This document shows positions 5,066 to 29,400 of a stretch of 64,000 nt of DNA, piece after piece; positions within the stretch are counted from its first letter, which is position 1, and the number at the start of each line of letters is the position of its first letter. Under the pieces are notes generated by a model. The model searched no databases, was not told the origin of the DNA, and saw only the letters and a list, made by a program, of their open reading frames with translations. The translations under genes and the position numbers were made by a program. The stretch spans positions 186,001 to 250,000 of IMG/VR virus record IMGVR_UViG_3300033049_000066; one strand, written 5' to 3'.

Positions 5066-5431
5066 ATGGCAATTGTAGATAAAAAATTAGATAAATTAGA
5101 TGAGCGACTCCGAGATATTGAGAGCTCTCTCGCTACCCTGTCGTCAGAGATTACTATCATTACAAAAAACTTAAAAGAAAACATGACTCGCGACCAGTCG
5201 GATGTCCTCGGTCGGATTGGCGGTTTGCGAGTTGATATGAAGGATAATGATTTAACACTAACAAATGATCTTAAATCACTTGAGGAAAAGGTAGGCAAGT
5301 TATACGTGTCACACGGGTGTGACCAACATCGTATTAAATTTAATGAAAAATTCCTTTGGGTTTTTCTCACTGGCATCGCGTCAGCTGGGTTCTTTTTACT
5401 ACAGAATTTTCTTAAATCTGGAGGATCGTAA
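5066..5431 (+). CDS. coiled-coil protein with C-terminal transmembrane helix (holin-like)
   Basis: Heptad-like N-terminus, C-terminal FLWVFLTGIASAGFFLL; holin role is inference only. Confidence 0.5.
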   Translation: MAIVDKKLDKLDERLRDIESSLATLSSEITIITKNLKENMTRDQSDVLGRIGGLRVDMKDNDLTLTNDLKSLEEKVGKLYVSHGCDQHRIKFNEKFLWVFLTGIASAGFFLLQNFLKSGGS

Positions 5432-5432
5432 A

Positions 5433-5804
5433 ATGGAAACATTCGCACCGTACATTACAGCAATTACCGCAGCAGTTGTAATAATGGCATTATTATGGAT
5501 CGGCAAACAAACGAAAAGAATAGACTCTGTACATTTTCTCTTTGGGTCTGGAATAATGCTTTATGTAATATATCATTTTTATGCAGTTAGTACCGGTGAT
5601 ATATTCACCCCAACATACATCATAATTAGCAACCTCTTTATCGCGTCAGTCGCACTTGCAAATGCATATTATAGTACATGCGTCTCAGTTAAGAACATAG
5701 TAACAATTAGATCTTGTCGAAGAAAAGTCAACACGCACAAACTTGTTGGCGAACGCCGAGCCAAACATTCGCATACATTGTTTTCAGAAAGTCTCAAACA
5801 GTAA
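5433..5804 (+). CDS. membrane protein (about 3 TM) with basic C-terminus
   Basis: GGAGG SD before ATG 5433; three hydrophobic segments. Confidence 0.6.
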   Translation: METFAPYITAITAAVVIMALLWIGKQTKRIDSVHFLFGSGIMLYVIYHFYAVSTGDIFTPTYIIISNLFIASVALANAYYSTCVSVKNIVTIRSCRRKVNTHKLVGERRAKHSHTLFSESLKQ

Positions 5805-8435: not shown

Positions 8436-8694
8436 ACTAATGCAGCAGAGAAAATCGCGGCGCGAAATCTTGAAAATTCAGCTCAGAAAATGTAATCACT
8501 TTCAGCAAGTCCTGTTCGTGCGTATGTATGGGCCGGCAGAACAGCGTACTGACAAATTCATGTACGATCCAGATATGCTCGCAAAGTACCATCTTAGCGA
8601 AATTATAGACAAAATGCCAAGCGAGCAATTACCACACGCCATCGTGCAAGTTGCGCGAACTATCGAGAAAAATGATGCCAAAAAGAACAACTAG
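8422..8694 (+). CDS. hypothetical protein
   Basis: Fills the tightly packed gene array. Confidence 0.55.
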   Translation: MTKIELMQQRKSRREILKIQLRKCNHFQQVLFVRMYGPAEQRTDKFMYDPDMLAKYHLSEIIDKMPSEQLPHAIVQVARTIEKNDAKKNN

Positions 8695-8695
8695 A

Positions 8696-8878
8696 ATGGT
8701 AAACGAATGCCAATGTAAAAATTGTGGGATCATACACCTACTTGGGCAAACTTTTAACGGTCGACGCTGCTGTAATCGGCCAAATCCGGTAATATTCGGC
8801 ATGCGGGAGATAGTCGAGTATAGACAAACTCATGAAGAAGAACAGGCAGAAGTTCTCGATAAAATGATGCGGAAATAG
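8696..8878 (+). CDS. small Cys-rich hypothetical protein
   Basis: CQCKNCG and RCCN; start uncertain (8672 or 8696). Confidence 0.45.
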   Translation: MVNECQCKNCGIIHLLGQTFNGRRCCNRPNPVIFGMREIVEYRQTHEEEQAEVLDKMMRK

Positions 8879-8882
8879 GATT

Positions 8883-9122
8883 ATGCCAAGCTGGAACGAT
8901 AATTCAAACATTGCGACCGATTTCGTCAGAAAGGTTAAATTTAAATTTGATACTGACCAAGGCCCAGGCGATGTTACATTAATGATAAACAGAGGTATTA
9001 CTATTGAGTTCGCAAAGAAACAACTGCTAACAGTGTTCGGTAGTCATTACAATACAATCAGCATTTCCGGATACGAAATTCTCGATTATATTGCTGAGAA
9101 TGACGATGATCGTACACACTAA
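8883..9122 (+). CDS. hypothetical protein
   Basis: AGGA SD. Confidence 0.6.
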   Translation: MPSWNDNSNIATDFVRKVKFKFDTDQGPGDVTLMINRGITIEFAKKQLLTVFGSHYNTISISGYEILDYIAENDDDRTH

Positions 9123-9293
9123 AGGCACTGGCACACTAACCGCGCAAAACTCGGCATTTAAAATTCAATTGATTTCTCTTTATAAAACAATAACTTAGCA
9201 CACCACATAAAATATTAACCGTAACGATTTCAATGACTTATAAAAATCCTAGTGAAAAGATGGCAGAAATGGCACGATATTTAAAATTAGAGG

Positions 9294-9658: not shown

Positions 9659-9687
9659 TTGACCTTTGGTGTTATATGTCATATAAT
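9659..9687 (+). promoter_or_regulatory. early promoter
   Basis: TAGAGG-TTGACC, 17 nt, TATAAT. Confidence 0.85.
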
Positions 9688-9817: not shown

Positions 9818-10957
9818 ATGTCAGAACATCGCCAATTAACAGCCAAAGAAGTACGTAATTCAATCATGCGCTGTTTCGCAGTTAAACGTCCAGCATTTAT
9901 TTGGGGTCCACCAGGTATTGGCAAGTCAGAATTAGTTGAAGGTATTTGTACCGAATTAGGTGGCGCTATGTATGATTTGCGTCTGGGCCAAATGGAACCA
10001 ACCGACATTCGTGGTATTCCTTTTTATAACAAAGATGCCGGTATCATGGATTGGGCACAGCCTGTTGATTTACCACAAGGTGAACAATTAGTTATTGACG
10101 CATTGCTTGATAACGTTGGTGAGCACGATGAAACCACTAAAATTAAAGATATGCCGGTTGTAGTGTTGTTTCTTGATGAAATGAACAGTGCTCCACCATC
10201 GGTGCTTGCGGCTGCTTATCAGCTTATCTTAAATCGTCGTATTGGTAAGTACAAACTTCCTGAAAACGTCGTTATTTTAGCTGCTGGTAATCGCGAAAGT
10301 GACAAAGGCGTTACATTCCGTATGCCAACTCCGTTAGCTAACCGTTTTGTCCACTTTGAAATGAAAGTTTCATTCGACGATTGGTTTGAATGGGCAGTTA
10401 AAAATAACATGCACAAGGATGTTGTTGGTTATTTGAACTTTGCCAAGCAAGATCTGTATGATTTTGACGCTAAAAGCTCAAGTCGCGCATTCGCAACACC
10501 ACGCTCTTGGGCATTCGTAAGCGATTTAATCGCAGATGACAGCTTAGATACTCGCACTGTCACTGACTTAGTCGCTGGTACTGTAGGTGAAGGCTTAGCT
10601 GTGAAGTTTGTTGCGCATCGTAAGGTTGCTAGCAAAATGCCTAACCCGAGCGAAATCCTCGAAGGTAAGGTTAAAAAGTTAGAAGTACAGGAAATCTCAG
10701 CAATGTACTCGCTGGTGGTATCTATGTGCTACGAGCTGAAAGCAGCTATCGACAATGGGGTAAAAGACAATGAATTCCACGCCATGGCAGATAACTTCTT
10801 CCGCTTTATGATGGATAACTTCGAAACTGAGCTGGTGGTTATGGGTGCTCGAGTGGCACTTACCACTTATAACTTGCCGATGTTACCTACTAAGCTTAAG
10901 AACTTTGACGAGTTCCACGAGCGTTACGGAAAGTACATCATTAACGCTAGCGACTAA
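9818..10957 (+). CDS. MoxR-like AAA+ ATPase
   Basis: Walker A GPPGIGKS, Walker B LFLDEMN, AAGNR sensor, PLANRF, ATPRSW. Confidence 0.9.
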   Translation: MSEHRQLTAKEVRNSIMRCFAVKRPAFIWGPPGIGKSELVEGICTELGGAMYDLRLGQMEPTDIRGIPFYNKDAGIMDWAQPVDLPQGEQLVIDALLDNVGEHDETTKIKDMPVVVLFLDEMNSAPPSVLAAAYQLILNRRIGKYKLPENVVILAAGNRESDKGVTFRMPTPLANRFVHFEMKVSFDDWFEWAVKNNMHKDVVGYLNFAKQDLYDFDAKSSSRAFATPRSWAFVSDLIADDSLDTRTVTDLVAGTVGEGLAVKFVAHRKVASKMPNPSEILEGKVKKLEVQEISAMYSLVVSMCYELKAAIDNGVKDNEFHAMADNFFRFMMDNFETELVVMGARVALTTYNLPMLPTKLKNFDEFHERYGKYIINASD

Positions 10958-11373: not shown

Positions 11374-11402
11374 TTGACCTCTAAGGCTAAATGTCGTATA
11401 AT
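11374..11402 (+). promoter_or_regulatory. early promoter
   Basis: TAGAGG-TTGACC, 17 nt, TATAAT. Confidence 0.9.
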
Positions 11403-11434: not shown

Positions 11435-12721
11435 ATGTCAGATCATACTACAGCAAGCAAAGACACAAAAAAAGCACACGGTGACCTATTAGGTCCTACG
11501 GACCCGGCGGTTGATTATGATGCGCGGGAAAAGCTTATTGGCGCTCGTGTGTCGTTGCTGCTAAAACAGGCATTTTTCGGCAACCTAGCTACACGATTAA
11601 AGCTCGTAAATGCTGATGAATGGCTTCCTACGTTAGCCACAGATGGTCGGCACTTTTACTATAACTCACGCTTCGTAAATATGTTGGACCAAAAAGAGAT
11701 GGAATTTGGCTTTGGTCATGAGGTTCTACATTGTGTATATGATCACTTTGGCCGTCGTGATAATCGTGATCCCCAGCTTTGGAACATTGCTAACGACTAT
11801 TGTGTGAATACTGATTTAGTCGATCACAATATTGGTCGCAAAATTACAACTATTGAAATTTTATATGATCGCAAATACAAGGGCATGCCATCTGAGGAAG
11901 TTTACGACCTCCTGAAGGAAAATGCTGAGTACATCGACATGGATGATCTCCTTGACAAAATGTTAGACGAGCATCTCGATGGTGAGGGTGATGGCGAGGG
12001 TGATGGTGATGGTAAGGAAGGTGAGGGCAAAGGTCGTCCGAAGATCACGAAAGCCATGCGCGACGAAATCCGAGATGAATTTAAGGAAGCTGTAATCAAC
12101 GCCGCAAGCAACGAGCCAAATGCAGGCAATATCCCCGGCAATGTTAAAAAAATGCTAAAGGAACTCACCGAGCCGCAGATGGACTGGCGTGAACTGCTTA
12201 ACTTAAATCTTACATCAGCAATTAAAGATGATTATACTTGGATGCGCCCTTCACGCCGAAGCTGGCACATGGATGCAATTATGCCGGGCATGAACCCAGG
12301 TGAGGCTATCGACATTGCTGTTGCTATTGACACATCTGGTTCAATTAGCCATAATATGCTCCGCGACTTCCTTAGTGAAGTGCAAGGTTGTATGGAATCA
12401 TTTACCGCTTACAAGATACATTTATTCTGTTTTGATACTGCTATTCATAATCCAGTACAATTCAATAGTGATAACATCATTACACTCGAAGAGTACGAAA
12501 TGGGTGGCTTTGGTGGTACTGATTTTGAACCAATTTTTGAATACATGAAAGAACATGAAATTGAGCCCGAGCGCCTAATATGTTTTACAGACGGCTATCC
12601 GTTTGGTAGCTGGGGTGATGAGGATTATGTAGATACGCTTTGGGTTATACACGGTAGCACCAGCATTGTTGCACCATTTGGCACCACAGCTTATTATGAC
12701 GAACATAAGAACGATAAGTAA
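11435..12721 (+). CDS. HExxH metallopeptidase-like + vWA protein (DUF2201-type MoxR partner)
   Basis: GHEVLHCVYDH; acidic Gly-rich linker GEGDGEGDGDG; MIDAS-like DTSGS, GGT and TDGY. Confidence 0.88.
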   Translation: MSDHTTASKDTKKAHGDLLGPTDPAVDYDAREKLIGARVSLLLKQAFFGNLATRLKLVNADEWLPTLATDGRHFYYNSRFVNMLDQKEMEFGFGHEVLHCVYDHFGRRDNRDPQLWNIANDYCVNTDLVDHNIGRKITTIEILYDRKYKGMPSEEVYDLLKENAEYIDMDDLLDKMLDEHLDGEGDGEGDGDGKEGEGKGRPKITKAMRDEIRDEFKEAVINAASNEPNAGNIPGNVKKMLKELTEPQMDWRELLNLNLTSAIKDDYTWMRPSRRSWHMDAIMPGMNPGEAIDIAVAIDTSGSISHNMLRDFLSEVQGCMESFTAYKIHLFCFDTAIHNPVQFNSDNIITLEEYEMGGFGGTDFEPIFEYMKEHEIEPERLICFTDGYPFGSWGDEDYVDTLWVIHGSTSIVAPFGTTAYYDEHKNDK

Positions 12722-12844
12722 CCAATGGAAACCTGGACTCAACTTTTTAAACACCTGATCCGCGCGTACCTAGGTCCGAGAAATCGGCAGGGCGCAGGCG
12801 GAAGGATTACAGAATGCTAAGCGGATGGTCCGCGGAGATTTTTC

Positions 12845-13042
12845 ATGAGTAATATCACAGTGCGAACGGATGGCATAATTAATAATCGACTGTCAGATGA
12901 TGAATTTATCGCGATCGTAGAGCAGATCTTCGGCAAGGACTACACGTTGGACGAGTACATTAATATGTACAATGATGCGAAGCGGGCGAAATTCGGCGGT
13001 ATCTCTGTACACCGTGAAAATGAGATTGAAAGACACGCATGA
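12845..13042 (+). CDS. hypothetical protein
   Basis: GGAG SD; ATGA overlap with next gene. Confidence 0.55.
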   Translation: MSNITVRTDGIINNRLSDDEFIAIVEQIFGKDYTLDEYINMYNDAKRAKFGGISVHRENEIERHA

Positions 13043-13314
13043 ACAGTAAGGAAAAAGATTCAATGCGGAGTCGGCGGATCCTTTGGCCGTGTAACGATGG
13101 TACCGCAAATGTATTTGAGTTGCCGGGCAATGACATGGTATTTAAAAAGATACTGCGAGAGTGGCTTGCTACGCACAGCACCGGTAGATTTTATCTTGGG
13201 CACAATGTTTTATGTTTATACAGTCGCAAGGACGCGACCGCATTCAAGATGTTTGACGTTATTGCAAAGTGTAAGGTCGAATATGAACTAAAGAAAATAA
13301 GTGTTCCGTCATGA
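13039..13314 (+). CDS. small paralogue 1 (W..GRF..D..F family)
   Basis: EWLATHSTGRFY..KDATAFKM. Confidence 0.65.
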   Translation: MNSKEKDSMRSRRILWPCNDGTANVFELPGNDMVFKKILREWLATHSTGRFYLGHNVLCLYSRKDATAFKMFDVIAKCKVEYELKKISVPS

Positions 13315-13547
13315 TTTCAGGGGCTTTAACAAAAAGTGTGGAATTTCGGATTGCCGGGCGACGACTGTGGATAACAAACCAGTATAATATGAAATTAATT
13401 ACGATTCAAAGGCGGTATTCTCGCACTGAGATATTGACATGGCTAGACAAGTATACAACAGGTCGGTTTTCCCTTAGCAGCACTCAAATTGCATTTGAAA
13501 ACGAAGCAGATGAACTTATATTTAAACTAGGATTTGACAATGTTTAG
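13311..13547 (+). CDS. small paralogue 2
   Basis: TWLDKYTTGRFS..FENEADELIFKL. Confidence 0.65.
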   Translation: MISGALTKSVEFRIAGRRLWITNQYNMKLITIQRRYSRTEILTWLDKYTTGRFSLSSTQIAFENEADELIFKLGFDNV

Positions 13548-13773
13548 GCCACTTTCTTGCAAGGTTGAAGATGAGATCGCCCGTAGATGGCTAGTTGACC
13601 CCATTGAGGACGGGCAGGATTATCCAGTACGAATTCCAGATAATATGACCCGCGCGGAGGTCGTTGCAAAAATTCACAAATTTACAACCGGTCGGTTTTA
13701 TACCGAGGGCAATATCATACAGTTTGCCAAAGAGCAAGATTGCGTCATATTTAAATTGTGCGCAGGCACATAA
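13534..13773 (+). CDS. small paralogue 3
   Basis: KFTTGRFY..FAKEQDCVIFKL. Confidence 0.65.
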   Translation: MTMFRPLSCKVEDEIARRWLVDPIEDGQDYPVRIPDNMTRAEVVAKIHKFTTGRFYTEGNIIQFAKEQDCVIFKLCAGT

Positions 13774-13776
13774 GAT

Positions 13777-14010
13777 ATGCGAACATACGATTTCGAAGAT
13801 TTTAGTTCCAACTGTATCCAGGTGAGATTTACCTACCCAGTAGACATGATAGCCTCACTAGATGCGATGAATGGAACTACAACTGATAAGAGAAAAGACA
13901 TCGAGCTGTGGCTTGCTGAGAACTGTAACGGATTGTATCTCGTCATGTTTACGGTGGTAATTTTCGAGGAAGATGCTGATGCGATTATATTTAATTTAAA
14001 ATACGGGTAG
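13777..14010 (+). CDS. small paralogue 4
   Basis: LWLAENCNGLY..FEEDADAIIFNLKYG. Confidence 0.65.
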   Translation: MRTYDFEDFSSNCIQVRFTYPVDMIASLDAMNGTTTDKRKDIELWLAENCNGLYLVMFTVVIFEEDADAIIFNLKYG

Positions 14011-14015
14011 GCATT

Positions 14016-14282
14016 ATGAATGTAAAAGACATCAATCCAATGGACTGGCACAATACAAAGCAACTAAATTTTATTCCAGCACACTTCACGCAATTCACTT
14101 TTAATCACAATGAGGAGCGCCTAAGAGTCTTAGCATGGGCTGAGCAAAATATCGCTGGGCGATTTGCCATTGAGGCCATTGTCGACTCTAATAAAACGAT
14201 GCACTGGCTAGTGGATTTTAAATATCGTATCGGGTTTGAGAATCCTGCGGATGCTACAATGTACGCGATGTTTTTTAAATAA
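14016..14282 (+). CDS. small paralogue 5
   Basis: AWAEQNIAGRFA..FENPADATMYAMFF. Confidence 0.65.
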   Translation: MNVKDINPMDWHNTKQLNFIPAHFTQFTFNHNEERLRVLAWAEQNIAGRFAIEAIVDSNKTMHWLVDFKYRIGFENPADATMYAMFFK

Positions 14283-14357: not shown

Positions 14358-14738
14358 ATGACTAAAAAAACAGACGAAGTAATTGCCGAAGTAGTTGACG
14401 AAACTCCTAAAGTTTCTAATGCTGCGCCCGCAGGTGTACCATCACTTTCAATACAGGATCTCGAAAATCTGCGCAATATCATTGATGTCGCGTCCAAGCG
14501 TGGCGTATTTAAGACAGAAGAATTTACAATTGTTGGCGATGCCTACGCTAAATTAGCCGCTTTTATCACGGCCATTAAACCAGCACCAGCGGCACAAGCA
14601 GAAGCGCCAGCAGCACCAGCAGAAGCTGCGCCTACGCCGCCGCCTGGAAGAACAATAAAAGAGGGTGAGCAGCCACCAATCGCACCGGCCGCGCCTGTTA
14701 TGAATACACCAATCGCACCAGCTGCGAACGCGGAATAA
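14358..14738 (+). CDS. hypothetical protein with Pro/Ala-rich tail
   Basis: GAGGA SD; TAAATA at 14321-14326 upstream. Confidence 0.75.
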   Translation: MTKKTDEVIAEVVDETPKVSNAAPAGVPSLSIQDLENLRNIIDVASKRGVFKTEEFTIVGDAYAKLAAFITAIKPAPAAQAEAPAAPAEAAPTPPPGRTIKEGEQPPIAPAAPVMNTPIAPAANAE

Positions 14739-14750
14739 GGAGATACAATT

Positions 14751-15380
14751 ATGGCATTTATGAAACATATCGGCAAGCATGGTGATCGCAGTGTCGCGAT
14801 CATGTTCCGCACGGTCCCGGACGAAACTCACATGGCCCTGGTAATTTACCCGGATACACTAAAACGTGAAATACACGACGCGGTGATGAAAGTTATAGAA
14901 AGTGAGACCGCACAGAGTGAGAATTCTCTCGCAGACGTGATGGGCAGAAGTTTGATGCCGGATGGTCGCCCCATGTTGCAATCGTTGCACGTTGAGGGCA
15001 AGTTAAAAAAAGTACAAACGAATCAGATTGTCATCACTCCCAACGCCTCGTCGCACGTACGCTTAGACGAGCTGAACAAAATCTTTGATGGCATGGAAGC
15101 TGGTGGTGACGCCGCTAAAAAGCTCGCAGAGGTTGACGCGAACGCTGGGCTCGTGGATCCGGCAGAGGCAAAACGCAATGCCGTGACGATCGAAGCGGCT
15201 GGTGATGGCGCACTGGATGATGGTGAGCTCGGCTCGGATATGTTGGACCAGTCCAAGCGGATGGCCGCTGAGGGCGCTTCGTTGGTCGCTGAGAGTAAGA
15301 ATCTTGAAAAAGAAGCTTACAAGCTAAATCCAAAATTGAAGCCAAAGCGTGTCGCAAAGAAAAAAGCAGCCAGTAAATAA
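14751..15380 (+). CDS. hypothetical protein with basic C-terminus
   Basis: AAGGAG SD; 209-aa ORF. Confidence 0.8.
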   Translation: MAFMKHIGKHGDRSVAIMFRTVPDETHMALVIYPDTLKREIHDAVMKVIESETAQSENSLADVMGRSLMPDGRPMLQSLHVEGKLKKVQTNQIVITPNASSHVRLDELNKIFDGMEAGGDAAKKLAEVDANAGLVDPAEAKRNAVTIEAAGDGALDDGELGSDMLDQSKRMAAEGASLVAESKNLEKEAYKLNPKLKPKRVAKKKAASK

Positions 15381-15389
15381 TCCTGGCTG

Positions 15390-15716
15390 ATGAAATCTGA
15401 ACTGAGTGACAAAGAAAGATTAGACGGGTGGGAAACATTAATTAATTCGATTGAGAAGACAGATATTCCGATGGAATTTATTCGTAATATCAGTATAATG
15501 TTTCACGCCCCGGTTGAGAATGACAATGAACAAGATATCAACATTCAACAGTTTCGAAAAGACGGTTTTGACGATAATGGGCTTGAAGAGATTGTAGCCG
15601 AGGTTTTTAAAGAGCACGACAATAATATTAAAGCCGTACATTTTTATTTAGACGTTGAGCATGTTGCGAACGAAGTGCAAGCGCAAACTAACCAATTACT
15701 AAGAGGATTACGATGA
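15390..15716 (+). CDS. acidic hypothetical protein
   Basis: ORF overlapping the DHFR start (ATGA). Confidence 0.7.
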   Translation: MKSELSDKERLDGWETLINSIEKTDIPMEFIRNISIMFHAPVENDNEQDINIQQFRKDGFDDNGLEEIVAEVFKEHDNNIKAVHFYLDVEHVANEVQAQTNQLLRGLR

Positions 15717-16174
15717 AATTAATATTAGCATGTGAGAGAAATGGTGGTATCGGGCACCGAAGCTCGATGCCGTGGCCCAAGCAAGACAAAGACCTAGCAA
15801 GATTTAAAGAACTTACACTTGGTACAACAATTCTGATGGGACGTGGGACCTGGGAAGCAAAAGGCATGCCTAAGCCGTTGCCCGATAGAAAAAACATCGT
15901 TGCCAGTAGTACCGACCTTGATTTGCCAACAGGTGTCGAGCAAATTAAAAATCTAAGTGGTGTGGATCTTTCGCACGTTGACTGGTGCATTGGTGGCGCG
16001 ATCCTTGTAAAATTACTATGGGATCAATTCACAGAAATACACCTAACCCGCATCTTTGGCGAATACGAATGTGATACAAAAATAAATCTCGAGCTTCTTG
16101 AGCGAGATTTTTATAGTTTGCGATCACAACTGTCACTAACACATACCTATGAAATTTGGCGGCGGCGAGATTGA
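15713..16174 (+). CDS. folA: dihydrofolate reductase
   Basis: GGIG..MPW, DLARFKELT, ILMGRGTW, PLPDRKNIV, IGGA. Confidence 0.92.
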   Translation: MKLILACERNGGIGHRSSMPWPKQDKDLARFKELTLGTTILMGRGTWEAKGMPKPLPDRKNIVASSTDLDLPTGVEQIKNLSGVDLSHVDWCIGGAILVKLLWDQFTEIHLTRIFGEYECDTKINLELLERDFYSLRSQLSLTHTYEIWRRRD

Positions 16175-16680
16175 AAGTAACCGAGGTTGAGTCCGTTCAA
16201 AAAAGTATCATTCCTCTTGACAAGATTGATATAAATAGTGGCCGTAAAATAGGAATAGTTGACAATTTCGACCTTGTAAAAAGTGAACTTAGTGATTCAA
16301 CAGTGTACTTTTTAATTGATGGTGAAAATATAATTGGAGCCGTTATTACTAAAATAGTAGAAACTCCAAGGCTTGAGACATACTTGCAAACGGTTCGTGT
16401 ATATATAACGCAAGAGCATCGTGGAAAAAATCTAGCAATTAAAATGTATTATTATATCAAGCATTTTGAAGATATGAATTTAATGAGCGACATTCAGCAG
16501 ACATCGGAAGGTGAAAAATTATGGCAAGCATTAGACTCAAAATTTGATGTAGGCGTAATGGACACTAATACTGGTGAGGTTGTCTCTAGTAATATAAAAG
16601 ATGCCTACAAAAAAGATTCACTAGTTTTAGTTACAGAAACTAAATTCAATTCACTAATCCGAGACAACCTGAAATTTTAG
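16171..16680 (+). CDS. GNAT-like acetyltransferase-fold protein
   Basis: VRVYITQEHRGKNLA resembles GNAT motif A; probable TTG start overlapping the DHFR stop. Confidence 0.55.
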   Translation: MKVTEVESVQKSIIPLDKIDINSGRKIGIVDNFDLVKSELSDSTVYFLIDGENIIGAVITKIVETPRLETYLQTVRVYITQEHRGKNLAIKMYYYIKHFEDMNLMSDIQQTSEGEKLWQALDSKFDVGVMDTNTGEVVSSNIKDAYKKDSLVLVTETKFNSLIRDNLKF

Positions 16681-16687
16681 AGGCAAT

Positions 16688-17578
16688 ATGAAACAATATT
16701 TACAAGATCTTAAAAATATCATCGAGCACGGACAAGAGCGGATCAACAGGACCGGCACTGACACTGTGCAACTCTTCGGCATGCAGACTCGGTATGATCT
16801 ACAGGCTGGTTTTCCCGCGCTGACTACAAAAAGATTGGCGTGGAAATCCGTCGTATCTGAATTGTTGTGGTTCCTTGAGGGCAGTGGAGATGAGCGGCGC
16901 CTGTGTGAAATTCTACACGGCAGTACTAGCGCTGAGAAAAAAACTATTTGGACCGCAAATGCCGAGGCTGGGTATTGGAAACATAAGGCAAAATTTACTG
17001 GTGATCTCGGGCGAGTGTACGGGGTGCAATGGCGGCACTGGCAATCGTTTGACAGCCTCACTCCTGATCACGAAGGTGGGCTCATGTCGGGTCGGATCAC
17101 AGAAGTTGATCAAATCGCGAATTTGGTGAGAAACATTAAGAATGATCCATTTGGTCGGAGGCATTTGCTCACAGCATGGAATCCCGGCGAACTCGACAAC
17201 ATGGCGCTACCTCCGTGTCACTTGCTGGCGCAATTCAACGTCACAGCGGATGGTAATCTTGATTGCCAAATGTACCAGCGTAGTGCAGATTTCCCCCTTG
17301 GTGTTCCCTTCAATATCGCCTCGTACGCGCTGCTTACGCACATGTTGGCGCAGGTTTGCGGGCTCGGGGTGGGCGATTTTGTACACGTTGTCGGGGATGC
17401 GCACATCTATAAGAATCAGATTAGCACCGCAGAAGAACAGATTTTGCGTGAGCCGCTAGAATTACCAGAGCTTTGGTTGAACCCTGATATTACAGATATT
17501 GATGATTTTAGCACAGCTGACATAAAATTACTCAATTATCGGCATCATCCTAAGCTGAATTACCCATTCTCTGTATAA
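16688..17578 (+). CDS. thyA: thymidylate synthase
   Basis: RTGT, ELLWFL, GRVYGVQWR, ALPPCH, YQRSAD..LGVPFNIASY, GDAHIY. Confidence 0.97.
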   Translation: MKQYLQDLKNIIEHGQERINRTGTDTVQLFGMQTRYDLQAGFPALTTKRLAWKSVVSELLWFLEGSGDERRLCEILHGSTSAEKKTIWTANAEAGYWKHKAKFTGDLGRVYGVQWRHWQSFDSLTPDHEGGLMSGRITEVDQIANLVRNIKNDPFGRRHLLTAWNPGELDNMALPPCHLLAQFNVTADGNLDCQMYQRSADFPLGVPFNIASYALLTHMLAQVCGLGVGDFVHVVGDAHIYKNQISTAEEQILREPLELPELWLNPDITDIDDFSTADIKLLNYRHHPKLNYPFSV

Positions 17579-17604
17579 TTTAATAATTCCCTGTGTAGCA
17601 TTCG

Positions 17605-17645
17605 TGCCTTTGTAAGTCTTTGATTTATAAGGGCATTTTTGTTTT
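17605..17645 (+). terminator. intrinsic terminator after thyA
   Basis: 12-bp stem (17605-17616 with 17624-17635, three G-U pairs) followed by TTTTTGTTTTT. Confidence 0.7.
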
Positions 17646-17792: not shown

Positions 17793-17821
17793 TTGACCTT
17801 TGGCGCTACTTGTCATATAAT
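17793..17821 (+). promoter_or_regulatory. early promoter
   Basis: TAGAGG-TTGACC, 17 nt, TATAAT. Confidence 0.9.
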
Positions 17822-23419: not shown

Positions 23420-26400
23420 CTATGGTTTTATAAACAGTGCTGGCACTGTTGATTGATCTTGTAACGGTACTCCATTACTTGCTGTGATTGCGCCAGAAGC
23501 ATACCATATTTGATCGTAATTCCATGGCACTCGTCCTTTAAGACTGACGTCACCTACAATATCGCCTGCTAGGTGCGCAGTGGCGCCTGTTCCCGCTGTT
23601 CCGCGGCGCAAACCACTAACTGTGTTAGCTAACAAATCTTGCTCGCGGTACGTAATTCTCTCTCCGTTAATTATTATTATGCCGAATTTTGCTGCTGTTA
23701 AATCCGGTGTACCAAGTACACTCGCGTCTGCTACATAGATAATGTCGTCCGACAGTGACAAATCTTGTGTAAGGTACGTTGAGGTTGTAGATGCCATCTT
23801 GTACATGCCGACGGTGTCTCGCATGTCTTTAAATAATCTGAAGGTTGATCCTGCTGTGATCACGTTTTCTGTAATTGACGTTACTACCACCACATCAGTT
23901 ACTGAAATTGTCGGACCGGCAATAACAAGTTGATTATCATTTATAATACTAAAACCGGTGCCTGGGTGTATACGGTTGCCGTTTAGTGTAACCCATAATC
24001 GATCTTGCGCAATAATAATGTCACGGTCTAACGTGAATACGTTCACAGATGCGTTGGCTCCAATGACAAAGTCGAAGTCTTCAGTGTCGAAGCTTGCTGA
24101 GTCAAACGCATTTAGTTCTTCAACGGATGCTATAGTTGGCCCCTGATACACTTGCGTTAAAATGTCCAGCTCCCGGAGGTCGCGGAAGGTGGTTACTGCA
24201 ATCTGATCACTTCCGGTGTACGTGTTGGTGAACAGAATTTCTGTACCACTGTACCAGTATTCGGATGATGTTCTTACGTACACTTCAACGGTATCGCCTG
24301 CGGCTGGCGCAGTGCCTAGGATCACATATCGATCTACACCAAGTGGACCGGTGACATAATCAATGCCGGATGCTAGCAACGTATCGTTAACGTAAACATC
24401 AACTTCGTTGTCTGCTACTGCGTCGCCGCTGTACCCGCCATTCAGTGGGTATAGGAAATTCGTAGTTACACCGTCGGCAGTGGTCCGGGCGGCGCTAGGA
24501 GGACGTAATCGTGACCCGTTAACCTCAACAATAGCGTTATGACGAGACTTACCTGTTACTGAAGTTCCTGGGTCTACTGTTAGGTCACCTGTCCACAGTT
24601 CAACAAGTGGATAGCTTTCTTCAAAGCCACCAGTTGATATCCCAAAGATCGTCACTGTGATGAAATCTGTTGGGCTTGGCGCTGCTGACAACGTAAGAGT
24701 TGACGTTTGATCATCAACTGCTGTTATAGTGACACCAGCATCTTCGACGCCGTTAACAAAGACAAGTGCTTTATTGATTTCAGTGCTGCGCACGTCTACT
24801 GTGAACGCATTTGCAGTGGTATCGCTGCCTCGTAGTGAATTTCTGTATAATTGATTTCCGCCACCTACTTCGTACACAATTATTTTAATATCGTCACCAG
24901 CGGTAATACCGCTAATTATATCAATTTCTTGATCGGCCCAGTCAACTGTGAAATCGAGTGTTTCGTACAGTGTAAGTCCGGTTGTTATATTTGCTACTAT
25001 CACAGTTATCGGGTGAGGTACTGCGTCAGCAAAGGAGAATGATTCTGTGCTTGCGTTCACTGTGTAGGAAAAGCTACTCAGCGCGAAAGCGTGACCATCA
25101 GTAAGATAATCCGAGCCGGGACGAGCGAACACTTTGATGTCAAGTGTATCGTAGATGGCTCCCGGTACCAGCTCTTCCGGCGCGTGAGAATGAAATTCGT
25201 CTACAAAGGCTCCGCCATCTACGTTGATATCTTCAGGCCGGGTTCCGAGATAGGTATCAAGGAATTGACTTTCGTATATTGTGTCAAGCTCTGACTCAGT
25301 TACGCTAAATGTGTCTCCGTCAACTTGGACTCCGGGGAACGAAATACCATTGAACAGAAGTGATAAATCTAGTCCTGGACGATTAACATCCGAAACATAA
25401 AATCCAGTGGTTCTGTCAATGCCGCTAAGTGTTTCGAGTTCAATTTCTACGTACTTAGTTGAAAGGAATGTTGTTGTATCCTCAAATGTAATCATATTAT
25501 AAACTTTATTATTATATCTTACAAAATTTCTTGACTCGCTGTTATTGTTTTCATTTACTATGACTCCGTCAAGTTCGTACCAGCTTGCGATACCTTCTTT
25601 AAGGTACTTTATTTCTATTGCATCTAATCCGTAAGCTGAGTCAGCTGTAATGCTGTGTATGCTACTAATAGCAGAGATGCTATCAACATCCGCCGTTAGC
25701 ACTATTGAATCAGCAGTAAAAATATCCGAGGCTGCGGTTCCTGCTACGATCTCGGTGGATCCATCTGCTGTAAGAATGATAGTATCAGCTGTTGGCGTAA
25801 CGTACGATCTTGTACCATCTTCGGATGTGATATAAGCTACTTCCTCAAACTTAGTCGGATCAAATACTGTGTTATCATCGGTGTCAGTGTACAGGGTGGT
25901 TACTCTAAACAACTTAGGCAATTCAATCACCGAGCCAGTTGGTTCTGGATTCGCGTTAGATATTGACGCGGTTGCTGTAAATGTTGTACCAGCATTGCTA
26001 CTTGTTGCGCCGGCTGCTAAGAAATTTGTGTTTCCTGGGGCAGCGATTTTGTACTCTGCTCCGATGATTAATTCTAGTAGCTGTGGATCAACTGCTGTGG
26101 GGTCGTACTGCACAATGTCTTTTGGTCCGCTATATTTAAATACTAAATTGCGTGTGCTCGTAACGGTGTTTTCTTCGTATTGCGCAACTTTAGACACGTA
26201 CTCATATCTATCATATTTTGCAGTAACTTTGAATGTTCTTACGAGTGCGTTCTCCATGATTGCGGTCGCTGCGGCGTCAACGCCTGTGCTGCCCGTGAAC
26301 GAAATTGTCGGCGGTGTTAAGTAGCCGCTGCCGGGGGTGACCACTACAATCTCACTAATTATACCACCTGGTCCGAGAAGTGCGGTCATAACTGCTGGCG

Positions 26401-29400
26401 ATGTGCTTGCGCCGGTTACTACAACCTCTGGCGCAATTGTGTAGCCGGTTCCTGGATTTGTAACCACTACACTTTTAACGGTTAATTTGTAATTATCGTA
26501 CCATTCACTCCAGGGTGGTGTCTGCCACACTATGTCGTCAGCTGGTTTATTGCTCGGATCGCTTACTAGTACCGCGCCGTCATCTAAAATTGGGCTAATG
26601 TACTGGTCAAACTCGGTACTAAATGTCGACGGACAATCAAAGTCAGTGACAGTACCAGCAATTAGATCAAACCCATCATAACTTAACGAAAAGTCTTTAA
26701 TCTTAGTATGATACGGCTTTGCTTCGCCTAAGTACTGAGTTAAATAATCTTGGTTATCTTTCTGATATACCGCGTACTGTGATAATGAACGTACTTTTTG
26801 TGTTACGTCAATTAAGCTTGTTTTAATTAACCAATCGACATTTGGTTGTTCACCGAGTACATAGTTAAAGATAGATAACATTGTGCGACTACGGTCGGTC
26901 GCTAAATCACTAATTAATAACTCTTCATTAATTGATCGAATAACGTTACGTAATTCAGTTACTGGAGTTGAAATAGTTGTCCATAGTCTCTCATCAAGTT
27001 GAATTGTACCATTTTCCAGCGCCGTTCTAACCCATGCACCGTCGATATATTGATATAGTTCCCAGCTGCCAACACTATTAAACGTTACTTTCGCAACAGC
27101 ATTATTTTCAATTATGCCTAAGGTTGCTAGCTCAGTGAATTCAGTTACTACAAAATCTATTCTCGAAAATGGATCGAATCCTTCTTTGTACCAGTTCACA
27201 GTAGACCAGTATTGCGTAGTGTCGTATTCTTGAACGTCGATTTGCAGTAGTGTCTCAAATGTCAGCGACGCTGTAACTTCGTAAATTGCCCATCTTCCGG
27301 AATTGTTATCATCTGTAGTAACAAGATATTTAAACCCTGTGCCAACTGCTGTGAAATCTTGAAATGATAATTCTGTGGTGGACGCGACTTGTAAGTCCCA
27401 CGCTCCAGTCGATGCGGTCGGTATTGCCTCTTCGCTCTCAAGCATCGGGTATGCTCGTGATTCAGTTATTGTGTTGCTAGCAAGAATGCCATTTACTTTT
27501 TTCAAGTAACTTGCTATTGCGGCGTATCTATCAATAAACATTGTTTGGCGAGGACGGAACTCAACACCGTATCTCTCAGCGGATGTTAACCCGGTGGCCG
27601 GAACAATGTTTCCATCGGTGTCGATGCCTACTAAGCTATCTTGTAATTTCTTATACAATCCGTCGGATAAAAAATCGTTTGGATGATTTTCGCGGAATAA
27701 GTCGTACTCCACAAACACATTATTCTCATTTTTGATCTTAGAATACTCAATGTGGATGATTGTATCTGTGTTATTAATTATATCCTTGCAGTTATAAATT
27801 CCGATTAAATTCGGTGCGACAAATGCCAAGAACGATATGCCGGAACTCTTAGGGGCTTCGATGTACGAAGCTACAGCAGCGGCGCTCAATGTCTTCTCGG
27901 AGTTCACGCTAATTGTCTCAACGTTGCGGACCCAGTAGTAATACACGTTCTGCAATAGACCTGAGCGGTCTATTGTTGATACTGTAACATATTTGTCTTC
28001 TGCTAAAATTGTACCGGTACCGGCATAGTTCGCCGGTAGTGCGGTACTCTCAGTCCACTGATAAATATCTACAGTGCTGCCAGTGAATGTTCTGCCCCAC
28101 ACTTTGCTAGTCTGATGTGCTGTACCTGTTGTGTAGTCTCGGAAGCGTACATTTTTTATATCCCACCACATTTTTCCAACTTGGTCTGCGCTCCATAATA
28201 AACCAGCACTTGCGTTATCATAAACAGTTGGGTCATACGGCGTAATAAAATCAATATTCTGACTTGCTGCTCCTAATATCTTGCCGTTCAGCGGGTCGAT
28301 ATAATCCAGATCGCGAATCACTGACAGTGAATCATTGTTGTACATATATACCGCATTAATTAAGGTAACGTCAACTTGATCGTTTTGTGTATTGGATGCG
28401 ATCCAACTAAGCGTATTTGCTGTATTGTTGAATATAACAACACGACCAATATTCGGCCGCCCGCCGCTTGCTAGTACATCATCTTCATCAGCTGTTGTAA
28501 ATGTTTGATCTGCAGTGACACCGCTGGTTGTCGCAGTGTTTAAATCGTAATTCATTGCCGAGACAACTAGTACGCCATCTATTAAACTAACTGCGCTGCC
28601 AAAGGCATCGCCTGTGTACATATCAGTGTCTAATATTTCTTGTCCGAGCAGTAGCATGTCGGACGTTATATCGCTTCCGGACATTAAATCATACGTATAA
28701 ACTACACCAGTATTCCCAGACGCATCAGTTGTAATAAGTCCGTTGTCTGCTGTAGATGATGTTGTGTCGGCAGAGGTCGAAATGTTATCGCCAATTCCAT
28801 CCGGAGTACCTACTGCTAACTGATCTAATGATAAATCAAGTGCTAACGAATTACCAAAGTGCTGTGCGACAGTGGTTGTAACCGGACTTGTTATTGTTTG
28901 CGCTATCGCGTACGGAGTAAATCCTAATGTTACTAACGAAATATTTGCACCAGCTAAAATATCTAATCTGTTTGGATTCAATCGTACAATTTTATTTGTT
29001 AGTTGGATCGTCAATAATCCATTAGCTTCGCTTGCGTCAATGTTTGGTATTGCGGCGGCATTAATTGCGTCAGCTACTAACAACGATGTTCCTTCGAATG
29101 GCAATGCTACATCAACATTGTTAATGCGAATTGTGCTGTTGGCTGGAATTAACGGATTTGCCACGGTGCTAGTTAGTGTTCCGTATGTTCGTGATTTGTT
29201 TTCAAAGCGTGATACTGTGCCTTGTCCGCTTAGATCTCCGTCGGCACCGACATACAATGAACATTTTGTCTTACAAATTGCTAGTGAATTTGTTGCTGAC
29301 ATGCCCGGCACGGCCAAGTCTTGAATTAGCTTGAACTCCGCTATGTCAACTTCTAAGGAGTCACCAGCTTCGGCTGTTCCAGTGACTATCGTCACTACAT

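What the first reader, a model, noticed from the sequence alone, without database searches (positions are those of the whole stretch)
13039..14282. Tandem array of five divergent paralogues sharing W..GR(F/Y)..F...D..F(K)L
Seen: five consecutive 77-91-aa ORFs align at the C-terminus: WLATHSTGRFY..SRKDATAFKM / WLDKYTTGRFS..FENEADELIFKL / IHKFTTGRFY..FAKEQDCVIFKL / WLAENCNGLY..FEEDADAIIFNL / WAEQNIAGRFA..FENPADATMYAM. Their N-termini differ and no DNA-level identity is apparent. Inference: an old, expanded small alpha/beta domain family with a conserved core and variable specificity arm, such as a diversified anti-defence or RNA-binding family of unassigned function.
Basis: partly seen in the sequence, partly recalled or inferred. 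Interest (0 to 1): 0.62.

Follow-up and report, generated by a model that had tools for sequence, protein, structure and literature searches.

The report
Unannotated small-protein family array, marine jumbo phage
Five neighbouring small genes in an uncultivated marine jumbo phage are real, anciently duplicated members of a large, phage-only protein family that no database names; one is a conserved core gene, the other four belong to an add-on array that ranges from 1 to 13 family genes in all between related phages, and their function is untested.

Summary
**Observation:** confirmed. The five ORFs (13039-14282, + strand) exist as described and are homologous well beyond chance:
- Shuffle z-scores reach 14.6.
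- A profile built without any window sequence finds exactly these five among 2,773 genome ORFs (E 2e-12 to 3e-20; next best 1.4).
- Profile-profile comparison links the weakest member, p5, to the rest at 98.2% probability (E 4e-14).

**What it is:**
- The window is part of a 293-kb seawater-metagenome jumbo phage.
- The family has at least 633 representative clusters. Almost all are 55-100 aa and viral. None matches Pfam, PHROGs, NCBIfam or PADLOC.
- p5 is the orthologue of a single-copy core gene. In 37 of 37 distinct contig layouts it sits between a MoxR-ATPase/vWA-metallopeptidase pair and a g209-DHFR-ThyA block.
- p1-p4 belong to old accessory subfamilies stacked upstream of p5. This happens only in the subclade nearest the window, where the copy number is 1, 1, 2, 4, 5, 7, 8 or 13.
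- p1-p4 evolve much faster than their flanks (26-36% identity against 60-89%).

**Function:** unknown. The most likely role is non-enzymatic binding proteins with diversified surfaces, acting in host takeover or counter-defence. This is inference (confidence about 0.4). The family is new; the kind of locus is familiar.

The parts
9818..10957 (+). MoxR-like AAA+ ATPase. First gene of the conserved block. A sigma-70-like promoter match lies at 9659-9687.
   Evidence: Pfam AAA / bpMoxR / AAA_5 and phrog_1297 'ATPase', E 3.5e-96. Promoter match. 87% identical to the L001 orthologue.
11374..11402 (+). Sigma-70-like promoter match (TTGACC-17-TATAAT) upstream of DUF2201. Probable start of the transcription unit that holds the array.
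   Evidence: The motif TTGAC[ACT]-N16-18-TATAAT occurs 52 times in the genome against about 1 in shuffles, and follows gene orientation.
11435..12721 (+). DUF2201_N putative metallopeptidase fused to a DUF2201 vWA-like domain. Left border of the variable slot.
   Evidence: Pfam PF13203 E 2.9e-37 and PF09967 E 1.6e-19. Iyer et al. 2021 (PMC7824862) describe the MoxR/vWA-metallopeptidase pair as typical of group 2.2 jumbo phages.
12845..13042 (+). 65-aa ORF inside the slot that is NOT a family member. It has an orthologue in L001.
   Evidence: Shuffle z <= 0 against all five. 57% identical to L001 4118-4312. No family hit.
13039..13314 (+). p1, 91 aa, pI 9.4. Accessory subfamily with an extra C-terminal helical tail. 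Its stop overlaps the p2 start (ATGA).
   Evidence: Clade with L001_m1 and L009_5326 at 99/98 support. Orthologues P0010 and P0019 are 60-62% identical. pI.
13311..13547 (+). p2, 78 aa, pI 9.6. The member closest to the family consensus. Modelled.
   Evidence: AF2 pLDDT 86.8, pTM 0.75; H8-17 E28-31 H38-48 E53-55 E59-62 H65-74. E 2.8e-20 to the independent profile.
13534..13773 (+). p3, 79 aa, pI 5.7. Overlaps p2 by 14 nt, or 8 nt if the ATG at 13540 is the start. Orthology unresolved.
13777..14010 (+). p4, 77 aa, pI 4.2. Accessory subfamily in which NCxG/HCEG replaces TTG(R).
   Evidence: Clade with L010_5181, L001_m6 and L009_6763 at 96/93 support. E 2e-12. pI.
14016..14282 (+). p5, 88 aa, pI 6.4. 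Orthologue of the conserved single-copy core gene. Has a long, hypervariable beta2-beta3 hairpin.
   Evidence: AF2 pLDDT 80.7; H8-13 E25-29 H32-45 E50-57 E67-74 H77-86. 57-67% identical to orthologues in L001, L009 and L010. Present in the same slot in 37 of 37 layouts. Hairpin length 18-30 residues.
14358..15716 (+). Three conserved genes of unknown function (g126 14358-14738, g209 14751-15380, g108 15390-15716). Right border of the slot.
   Evidence: phrog_13789 and phrog_15894, both of unknown function. g209 lies within 1.6 kb downstream of the p5-type gene in 37 of 37 layouts.
15713..17578 (+). DHFR (15713-16174), a 174-aa ORF, and thymidylate synthase (16688-17578). End of the unit.
   Evidence: Pfam DHFR_1 E 9e-24 and Thymidylat_synt E 7.6e-101.
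17604..17636 (+). Intrinsic-terminator-like hairpin (15 pairs plus a T-run) after ThyA.

Best explanation
**Shown**
- The five ORFs are real, tightly packed genes. They lie between a sigma-70-like promoter match upstream of DUF2201 and a terminator-like hairpin after ThyA, so they are probably co-transcribed.
- They encode paralogues of a phage-restricted, un-annotated domain family of about 75-90 aa. The layout is α0-β1-α1-β2-β3-α2, a ferredoxin/RRM-like fold lacking the last strand.
- p5 is the orthologue of a single-copy core gene of a clade of jumbo phages. It is always placed between the MoxR / vWA-metallopeptidase pair and the g209-DHFR-ThyA block.
- p1-p4 belong to old accessory subfamilies stacked between DUF2201 and p5. 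This occurs only in the subclade nearest the window. There the slot holds 1 to 13 family genes in collinear order, and the accessory copies diverge much faster than their neighbours.

**Inferred**
- The positions conserved across the family are hydrophobic or turn/cap residues (W, G, F, F, D-A, F-x-L). None looks like a catalytic or shared ligand-binding set.
- N-terminal arms, the β2-β3 hairpin and net charge vary freely (pI 4.2 to 9.6).
- The domain is therefore most likely a stable scaffold that acts by stoichiometric binding, with each subfamily binding a different partner.
- For the fast-evolving, gain-and-loss-prone accessory copies (p1-p4), the most likely partners are host proteins. 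That would make them host-takeover or counter-defence inhibitors.
- For the slowly evolving, syntenically fixed p5, the most likely partner is a conserved phage or host component. It may belong to the neighbouring MoxR/vWA-peptidase module or the g126/g209/g108 genes.
For: **Paralogy:**

**Family size and viral restriction**
- 633 representative clusters at E <= 1e-3, nearly all 55-100 aa.
- The nearest Atlas clusters are 90-100% viral.
- No relative was found in bacterial or archaeal genomes by a pattern scan.

**No known family:**

**Fold:**

**Conserved positions are W44, G51, F62, D67, F53, L73 and R18:**

**Charge spread:**

**Old duplications and collinear orthologous subfamilies:**

**Faster divergence of the accessory copies**
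- p1-p4 are 26-36% identical to their counterparts.
- MoxR is 87%, DUF2201 86-89% (tblastn, blastp), DHFR 71%, g209 69% and p5 59%.

**Copy number:** 1, 1, 2, 4, 5, 7, 8 or 13 where DUF2201 is at least 73% identical to the window's, and 1 in all 29 more distant layouts.

**Arrays recur elsewhere**
- An unrelated contig, L011, carries at least 7 members in tandem.
- Two-domain fusions exist (P0103, P0105, P0147).

**Transcription-unit signals:**
Against: - There is no experimental or computational evidence for any binding partner.
- The host is unknown, and no RNA data exist for this phage.
- Subfamilies are retained in collinear order across phages. That fits stable, specific housekeeping roles as well as it fits an arms race.
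- In PA5oct the syntenic MoxR/DUF2201 region would fall in the block the authors call middle/late, not in their early cluster. This assumes locus-tag numbers equal gp numbers. It weakens an 'immediate-early anti-defence' reading.
- The predicted complex of p5 with DUF2201 gave no verdict. That result is not evidence either way.
- The low identity of p1-p4 to their counterparts could partly reflect wrong orthology assignment. p2 and p3 are unresolved in the tree.
Confidence: 0.4

Rival explanations
1. The proteins are cofactors or adaptors of the MoxR AAA+ / vWA-metallopeptidase machine. The p5-type protein would be an obligatory partner, for example a substrate adaptor or regulator in the virion-assembly chaperone role proposed by Iyer et al. 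The extra paralogues would add or change client specificity.
For: - The p5-type gene lies directly or closely downstream of DUF2201 in 37 of 37 layouts, over DUF2201 identities from 47% to 86%.
- In L016, L025, L026, L027, L003, L037, L048 and L049 it follows DUF2201 within about 50 nt.
- Strong conservation of the p5 N-terminus and core implies a conserved partner.
- Iyer et al. propose the MoxR-vWA pair as an assembly chaperone.
Against: - Family members also occur away from any MoxR/DUF2201 gene. Examples are PA5oct EST35_0274/0275 near ClpP and MazG, EST35_0247 near RNR and ThyA, and the L011 array near NUDIX and HD_4 genes.
- Vibrio phage 2.275.O has the MoxR/DUF2201 pair but no detectable family member.
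- Adjacency equally links p5 to g126 and g209.
- The complex prediction gave no verdict.
Confidence: 0.2
2. The proteins are RNA- or single-stranded-DNA-binding regulators built on an RRM/KH-like fold. They would act on phage or host transcripts post-transcriptionally, each paralogue with its own target.
For: - Many p1-p3-type members carry an Arg-rich N-terminal helix. R18 is at least 90% conserved in alignment A5.
- p1 and p2 are basic, with pI 9.4 and 9.6.
- From general knowledge, the β3-α2 motif (hydrophobic-x-F-E-x-x-x-D-A) resembles the same region of RRMs.
Against: - There is no β4.
- No RNP1/RNP2 or GXXG motif is present. Pfam RRM_1 touched only p4, at E 0.043, and at a non-equivalent region.
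- p4 (pI 4.2) and p3 (pI 5.7) are acidic, and family pI runs from 4.7 to 9.7.
- Conserved aromatic residues alternate as expected for buried positions (inference).
Confidence: 0.15
3. The proteins are small-molecule 'sponges' or sensors of ACT-like type. Oligomers of the domain would sequester a nucleotide or metabolite, for example an immune signalling molecule.
For: - Two-domain fusions suggest that domains pair up.
- Neighbouring genes concern nucleotide metabolism.
Against: - No conserved polar pocket residues exist. The only conserved polar loop position (R/K/E after the Gly) varies in charge.
- Structural scores are at noise level.
- Foldseek against the PDB, which holds solved phage sponge proteins, gave nothing.
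Confidence: 0.06
4. The proteins are packaged, injected internal proteins, analogous to the T4 internal-protein locus, perhaps processed by the neighbouring metallopeptidase.
For: - The locus is hypervariable, made of small proteins, and sits next to a protease-like gene.
Against: - The shared part is the C-terminal fold, not an N-terminal targeting peptide. N-termini are the most variable part.
- None of the four PA5oct members carries the ESI-MS/MS virion note that neighbouring genes carry.
Confidence: 0.04
5. The ORFs are not real genes. The shared motif would be chance, or the trace of a decayed repeat.
For: - No RNA or protein evidence exists for this phage.
- Shine-Dalgarno-like sequences are weak before some starts.
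Against: - Orthologues with conserved reading frames occur in many independent metagenomes.
- There are 633 related clusters.
- AlphaFold models are confident.
- Profile E-values reach 1e-20.
Confidence: 0.01

Closest known systems
Hyperplastic loci of small polymorphic proteins in T4-type phages (the internal-protein IPI/IPII/IPIII locus). Recalled from general knowledge, not tested here.
   Same: A fixed genomic slot between conserved genes holds a variable number of small, fast-diverging proteins. At least one T4 member (IPI*) is a counter-defence protein.
   Different: T4 internal proteins share an N-terminal capsid-targeting peptide and are packaged. Here the shared part is the C-terminal fold, and the PA5oct members were not detected in virions. 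No sequence relation: the profile finds nothing in T4.
Tandem arrays of diversified immunity proteins against polymorphic toxins (SUKH/Imm families; Zhang, Iyer, Aravind; PMC3113570, PMC3482391, found).
   Same: Tandem arrays of paralogous small non-enzymatic proteins with a conserved fold and diversified surfaces. Copy number varies between close relatives.
   Different: No match to any Imm or SUKH Pfam model. No adjacent toxin gene. The genes lie in a lytic jumbo phage, not in a bacterial toxin locus.
Phage anti-defence gene islands (anti-CRISPR and other anti-defence loci). General knowledge.
   Same: Clusters of small, unannotated, rapidly turning-over genes. No enzymatic signatures.
   Different: Such islands usually mix unrelated families, whereas this array is made of one family. 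No structural match to any solved anti-defence protein in the PDB. Nothing here shows inhibition of a defence system.
Ferredoxin-like small domains: RRM, type I KH, ACT, secretin N-domains.
   Same: A β-α-β-β-α core with two helices packed on one face of a three-stranded sheet. Superposition over about 50-58 residues at rmsd 1.5-2.5 A.
Lineage-specific expansions in jumbo phages, e.g. about 35 zinc-ribbon copies in Bacillus phage G (Iyer et al. 2021, PMC7824862).
   Same: Expansion of one small domain within a jumbo phage genome, with function inferred only from context.
   Different: A different fold. Here the expansion is confined to one syntenic slot and is shared as collinear orthologous subfamilies across several phages. 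It is not a single-genome burst.

Membership tests
RRM (Pfam PF00076 / RRM-like fold) | Four-stranded sheet with topology β1-α1-β2-β3-α2-β4 | tested here: not met
   Both models end with α2 and have no β4. An extra N-terminal helix precedes β1.
RRM (Pfam PF00076 / RRM-like fold) | RNP1/RNP2 sequence motifs and a match to the Pfam profile | tested here: not met
   Only p4 touched RRM_1, at E 0.043 (13-14 bits against a cutoff of 20.7), and with its N-terminal residues 8-40 rather than the core. None of 142 members matched at E <= 0.01.
RRM (Pfam PF00076 / RRM-like fold) | Clear structural similarity to solved RRMs | tested here: inconclusive
Type I KH domain | β-α-α-β-β-α topology with a GXXG loop between the two helices | tested here: not met
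ACT domain | β-α-β-β-α-β fold, with ligand binding at the β1-α1 loop or dimer interface | tested here: inconclusive
Any curated protein family (Pfam-A, PHROGs v4, NCBIfam 20, PADLOC 2.0) | Profile match at or near the curated threshold | tested here: not met
   No hit for the five or for 142 diverse members.
Solved anti-defence proteins (anti-CRISPRs, Tad/Acb-type sponges, Ocr-like mimics, and others in the PDB) | Sequence or fold similarity to a solved member | tested here: not met
   Profile against PDB sequences: nothing. Foldseek against the PDB: no match with E < 1. The VIA wide lists contain no anti-defence protein. This does not exclude an anti-defence function.
Solved anti-defence proteins (anti-CRISPRs, Tad/Acb-type sponges, Ocr-like mimics, and others in the PDB) | Demonstrated inhibition of a defence system | not testable with these tools
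   Needs experiments.
T4-type internal proteins | Shared N-terminal capsid-targeting sequence, and presence in virions | tested here: not met
   N-termini are the least conserved part. PA5oct members lack the ESI-MS/MS virion note. The profile finds nothing in T4.
Polymorphic-toxin immunity arrays (SUKH/Imm) | Match to Imm/SUKH profiles and adjacency to a toxin gene | tested here: not met
   No Pfam match. The neighbours are MoxR, DUF2201, DHFR and ThyA.
The new family itself (core motif W-x(5)-T-x-G-[RKE]-[FY] ... hydrophobic-x-F-x(4)-D-A-x(2)-F-x-L) | Significant match to a profile built from independent members | tested here: met
   All five ORFs score E 2e-12 to 2.8e-20, and the next genome ORF scores 1.4. 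hhalign between the subfamilies gives 98.2% probability.

The most novel reading that the evidence does not exclude
The p5-type protein is the substrate adaptor of the phage MoxR / vWA-metallopeptidase machine. The accessory paralogues stacked upstream of it would be interchangeable adaptors that retarget this ATP-driven protease/chaperone onto different host proteins, such as defence or stress-response factors. If so, the 1-to-13-copy array is a modular 'targeting library' for phage-directed remodelling or degradation of host proteins.
Probability: 0.07. Interest if true: 0.8.

Novelty: new member of a known kind. Interest (0 to 1): 0.45.

Why it matters
- **Annotation gap.** The family is large (at least 633 clusters at 50% identity) and confined to phages. 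It is missing from Pfam, PHROGs, NCBIfam and the searched literature. Defining it would remove a recurrent block of 'hypothetical proteins' from marine and other jumbo-phage annotations.
- **A natural comparison.** One locus holds a slowly evolving single-copy core member next to fast-evolving accessory paralogues, with 1 to 13 family genes in the slot. That separates a housekeeping role from a probable host-interaction role on the same scaffold.
- **It can be tested.** Members exist in cultured Pseudomonas phages of the PA5oct group, so the question is experimentally tractable.
- **Possible payoff.** If the accessory copies prove to be counter-defence or host-takeover binders, the family would supply many new inhibitors. 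If p5 works with the MoxR/vWA-peptidase, it would give the first functional handle on that hallmark module of group 2.2 jumbo phages.

Tried and rejected
1. **Pfam, PHROGs, NCBIfam, PADLOC.** Scans of the five ORFs and of 142 family members gave nothing usable.
2. **PDB by sequence and by Foldseek.** A profile search of PDB sequences gave only a chance β-lactamase match at E 1.1. Foldseek against the PDB gave nothing with E < 1.
3. **BFVD and ESM Atlas.** Only unnamed viral proteins came up.
4. **GenBank phages.**
   - blastn and tblastn with the array, p2, p5 and P0146 found no match.
   - The PA5oct member finds only PA5oct-like phages.
5. **Predicted complex of DUF2201 with p5.** 'No answer', score 0.00, controls not run. 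This is not evidence for or against binding.
6. **Fusion partners as functional hints.**
   - P0147 and P0160 have no known domains.
   - P0153 (853 aa, TPR and repeats) is a repeat-driven false positive.
7. **Names from source databases.** None was useful. One JGI name, 'aromatic ring-cleaving dioxygenase', on an 82-aa protein is implausible.
8. **A motif I recalled from T4-like cyanophages and pelagiphages.** Not confirmed. The profile finds nothing in P-SSM2, HTVC008M, T4 or KVP40.
9. **Expression data.** Only three seawater-metagenome DNA runs from one study hold the sequence, and there is no RNA.
10. **The search for related loci.** A single-protein scan of bacterial and archaeal genomes found no relative.
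11. **Literature.** Searches for DUF2201 in phages and for arrays of small paralogues in jumbo phages found no description of this family.

No alternative genetic code was used. 
Full report
**1. The observation**

| ORF | Coordinates | Length |
|---|---|---|
| p1 | 13039-13314 | 91 aa |
| p2 | 13311-13547 | 78 aa |
| p3 | 13534-13773 | 79 aa |
| p4 | 13777-14010 | 77 aa |
| p5 | 14016-14282 | 88 aa |

- The genes are tightly packed. p1 and p2 share an ATGA overlap. p2 and p3 overlap by 14 nt. p3-p4 and p4-p5 are separated by 3 and 5 nt.
- A MAFFT alignment reproduces the shared C-terminal block: W...TGRF... hydrophobic-x-F-E...D-A..F-K-L.
- Smith-Waterman scores against 1,000 shuffles give z = 14.6 (p2-p3), 11.2 (p1-p3), 10.0 (p2-p4), 7.8 (p2-p5), 7.5 (p1-p2) and 4.5 (p1-p4).
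- p5 is linked only through p2. The upstream 65-aa ORF (12845-13042) is unrelated.
Only short motif-coding remnants survive: 32 nt at 66-72% in three copies, and 24 nt at 88% between p2 and p3, spaced at the gene period of 229-240 nt.

**2. Independent confirmation of homology**

- A profile of the five finds no sixth member in the genome.
- A profile built from 137 metagenomic relatives, with the window's own rows removed, recovers exactly the five ORFs among 2,773 genome ORFs. E runs from 2.8e-20 to 2e-12, and the next ORF scores 1.4.
- p5 was the weakest link. Profile-profile comparison of a 37-sequence p5-type alignment against a 46-sequence p1-p4-type alignment gives 98.2% probability and E = 4e-14. 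It aligns W..NTTGRF and IGFEN.ADA..F, with an insertion of about 15 residues in p5.

**3. Genome and neighbourhood**

- The window is bases 186001-250000 of a single 293,278-bp contig.
- The DNA is found only in seawater metagenome runs from one study.
- The only nucleotide similarity to cultured phages is weak and local: about 70-76% over 150-265 nt to PA5oct-like Pseudomonas jumbo phages, and 71% over 119 nt to Vibrio phage 2.275.O.
- Upstream of the array lie two genes:
  - A MoxR-like AAA+ ATPase (9818-10957).
  - A DUF2201_N metallopeptidase fused to a DUF2201 vWA-like domain (11435-12721).
- Iyer et al. 2021 (PMC7824862) describe this pair as characteristic of group 2.2 jumbo phages. They propose it is a virion-assembly chaperone.
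- Downstream lie three conserved genes of unknown function (g126, g209, g108), then DHFR and thymidylate synthase.
- A sigma-70-like motif (TTGAC[ACT]-N16-18-TATAAT) occurs 52 times in the genome against about 1 expected, and follows gene orientation. One copy sits just upstream of DUF2201 (11374-11402). The next on this strand is at 17793. A strong terminator-like hairpin follows ThyA (17604-17636).
- The array is therefore probably part of one DUF2201-to-ThyA transcription unit. This is inferred from motifs only.

**4. The family**

- A word-indexed search found 17 unnamed metagenomic relatives.
- The exhaustive profile search found 633 representative clusters at E <= 1e-3, of which 34 are at E <= 1e-10. 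Nearly all are 55-100 aa.
- A few proteins carry two copies of the domain (P0103, P0105, P0147). One long hit, P0153, is a repeat artefact.
- None of 142 diverse members matches any Pfam-A or PHROG model. NCBIfam, PADLOC and PDB sequence profiles are also blank.
- The nearest ESM-Atlas clusters, by features and by shape, are unnamed and 90-100% viral.
- Among cultured phages:
  - The profile finds members in PA5oct (EST35_0274, 0275, 0247 and 0347, all 'hypothetical').
  - It finds four weak matches in Agrobacterium phage Atu_ph07.
  - It finds none in Vibrio phage 2.275.O, T4, KVP40, P-SSM2 or HTVC008M.
- A pattern scan of bacterial and archaeal genomes found nothing. That scan has limited sensitivity.

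**5. Structure**

| Model | pLDDT | pTM | Elements |
|---|---|---|---|
| p2 (20-row alignment) | 86.8 | 0.75 | H8-17, E28-31, H38-48, E53-55, E59-62, H65-74 |
| p5 (37-row alignment) | 80.7 | 0.65 | H8-13, E25-29, H32-45, E50-57, E67-74, H77-86 |

- The order of elements is the same in both. p5 has a longer β2-β3 hairpin.
- The core β-α-β-β-α is a ferredoxin/RRM-like fold without the final strand, preceded by an extra helix.
- Foldseek against the PDB finds nothing.
- Both models hit many of the same templates over equivalent residues: 5uyy_A, 5v0s_B, 3n89_B, 6exx_A, 4ct8_A, 1tua_A, 1v8c_A, 4pwu_A, 8co1_Q1 and 4e9j_A.
- BFVD gives weak matches to uncharacterised phage proteins. Six are shared by the two models, including proteins of Atu_ph07 and PA5oct.
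- A direct superposition of the five structures could not be run.

**6. Comparative genomics of the locus**

Eight syntenic metagenomic loci (L001, L003, L004, L009, L010, L014, L015, L016) and 42 IMG/VR loci were scanned with the family profile and with the flanking proteins.

- Of 46 loci that contain both DUF2201 and a member, 37 have distinct layouts.
- In 37 of 37 layouts, a p5-type gene lies downstream of DUF2201 with g209 within 1.6 kb after it.
- In 31 of 37 layouts it is the only member. The other ORFs in those slots are unrelated (best E 0.015).
- Multi-copy arrays appear only where DUF2201 is at least 73% identical to the window's. Copy numbers there are 1, 1, 2, 4, 5 (this window), 7, 8 and 13. 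The p5-type gene is always last.
- L001 contains one member that the original gene caller missed (5215-5478).

The tree of 31 array members shows that the window's five copies are not monophyletic:

| Clade | Support |
|---|---|
| p1 with L001_m1 and L009_5326 | 99/98 |
| p4 with L010_5181, L001_m6 and L009_6763 | 96/93 |
| p5 with its orthologues | 83/66 |

- p2 and p3 are unresolved.
- One pair in L009 (3931 and 4312) is a recent duplicate, at 98/90.
- The order of subfamilies is collinear between arrays. The array is therefore an old set of distinct subfamilies with lineage-specific gains and losses.

Identity between the window and L001, in % (one search gives similar values):

| Protein | Identity |
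|---|---|
| MoxR | 87 |
| DUF2201 | 89 |
| DHFR | 71 |
| g209 | 69 |
| ThyA | 60 |
| g108 | 60 |
| p5 | 59 |
| p1 | 36 |
| p2 | 34 |
| p4 | 26 |

An unrelated contig, L011, has NUDIX, HD_4 and CoaE genes nearby and carries at least seven members in tandem. Arrays of this family are therefore not unique to this slot.

**7. What the sequence pattern says about mechanism**

- Positions conserved across the family are W44, G51, F53, F62, D67, F71 and L73 (p2 numbering). In the p1-p3 type there is also an Arg pair at the end of the first helix.
- These are core, turn or helix-cap residues. There is no constellation suggesting catalysis or a common ligand.
- The N-terminal half of the p1-p4 type is almost free to vary.
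- In the p5 type the N-terminus (INPMDWHNT..L..IP.HF) and the core are strongly conserved. The tip of the β2-β3 hairpin is hypervariable in sequence and length, at 18-30 residues.
- pI values are 9.4, 9.6, 5.7, 4.2 and 6.4 for p1-p5. The family's 10-90% range is 4.7-9.7.

My reading is inference. The domain is a stable scaffold that works by binding, with a different partner for each subfamily. p5 would have a conserved partner. p1-p4 would have fast-changing partners, most plausibly host proteins, which would make them host-takeover or counter-defence factors.

Points against:
- No partner is known.
- The collinear retention of subfamilies would also fit stable phage-internal roles.
- In PA5oct the syntenic region appears to belong to the middle/late class rather than the early cluster, if locus tags equal gp numbers.
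- PA5oct virion proteomics flags neighbouring genes but none of the four members. That argues against a packaged or injected role.

**8. Rivals**

- **Adaptors or cofactors of the MoxR/vWA-metallopeptidase machine.** Supported for p5 by invariant adjacency. Weakened because members occur elsewhere without that pair, and because Vibrio phage 2.275.O has the pair but no detectable member.
- **RRM/KH-like nucleic-acid binders.** Only generic fold resemblance and some basic members support this. The defining motifs and the fourth strand are absent.
- **ACT-like small-molecule sponges.** No conserved pocket.
- **Packaged internal proteins.** See section 7.
- **Artefact.** Excluded by the comparative data.

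A predicted complex of DUF2201 with p5 returned no verdict and is not used as evidence.

**9. Comparison with what is known, and novelty**

- The locus works like other hyperplastic slots of small polymorphic phage proteins, and like tandem arrays of diversified immunity proteins. It is a member of none of those families by any test available here.
- I found no description of this family in Pfam, PHROGs, NCBIfam, PADLOC, the PDB or the searched literature.
- I rate it a new family of a familiar kind.
- Interest is moderate. The family is large, phage-specific and testable in the PA5oct group. The contrast between core gene and accessory array at one locus is neat. But there is no functional evidence yet.

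- Only genetic code 11 was used.
- No toxin, effector or animal/plant virus sequence was involved.

Noticed in passing
window 23420-36637 (- strand): A single 4,405-aa ORF with no Pfam match at E <= 1e-5. It is followed by a 1,118-aa ORF (36638-39994), also without a match. Both are probably giant structural or fibre-like proteins of the jumbo phage.
   Followed up: partly
window 50255-53218 (+ strand): A 987-aa ORF with a weak SMC_N/RecF-type ATPase match split around a LAGLIDADG_3 domain (residues 265-319). This suggests an intein or homing-endonuclease insertion in an SbcC/Rad50-like gene.
   Followed up: no
whole genome G000; window sites 9659, 11374, 17793: The motif TTGAC[ACT]-N16-18-TATAAT occurs 52 times against about 1 expected, almost always on the coding strand of the local genes. 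The phage evidently relies on host sigma-70-type promoters, as reported for PA5oct.
   Followed up: partly
window 12845-13042: A 65-aa ORF inside the slot that is not a family member. It has a 57%-identical orthologue at the equivalent place in L001 (4118-4312). A weak hairpin with a T-run lies just upstream (12821-12833).
   Followed up: partly
L001 5215-5478: A family member (87 aa, E 4e-18) that the source's gene caller did not call. It fills a 243-nt 'gap' between two called genes.
   Followed up: yes
L009 3883-7273: The largest array seen: 13 family members in 3.4 kb. It includes a recently duplicated pair (3931 and 4312) and three ORFs that were not called or were called differently.
   Followed up: partly
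L011 4422-7762: An independent tandem array of at least 7 family members, including the two-domain protein P0103. The contig has a different gene context (NUDIX, HD_4, CoaE). The motif variant there has W in place of F/Y after the Gly.
   Followed up: partly
L010 7455-9251: Thymidylate synthase is called as 598 aa, about twice the normal length. tblastn matches only its C-terminal part (8613-9248). This suggests an insertion (intron, intein or homing endonuclease) or a fusion.
   Followed up: no
window 14358-15716 and orthologues in all loci: Three conserved genes of unknown function (g126 with an Ala/Pro-rich tail, g209, g108) always accompany the p5-type gene and precede DHFR/ThyA. They match only PHROGs of unknown function (13789, 15894).
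   Followed up: partly
L005 (Vibrio phage 2.275.O, MG592671.1 235443-247561): This phage has the MoxR / DUF2201 ... ThyA synteny but no detectable member of the family. The family is therefore not obligatory for the MoxR/vWA module, or it has diverged beyond detection there.
   Followed up: partly
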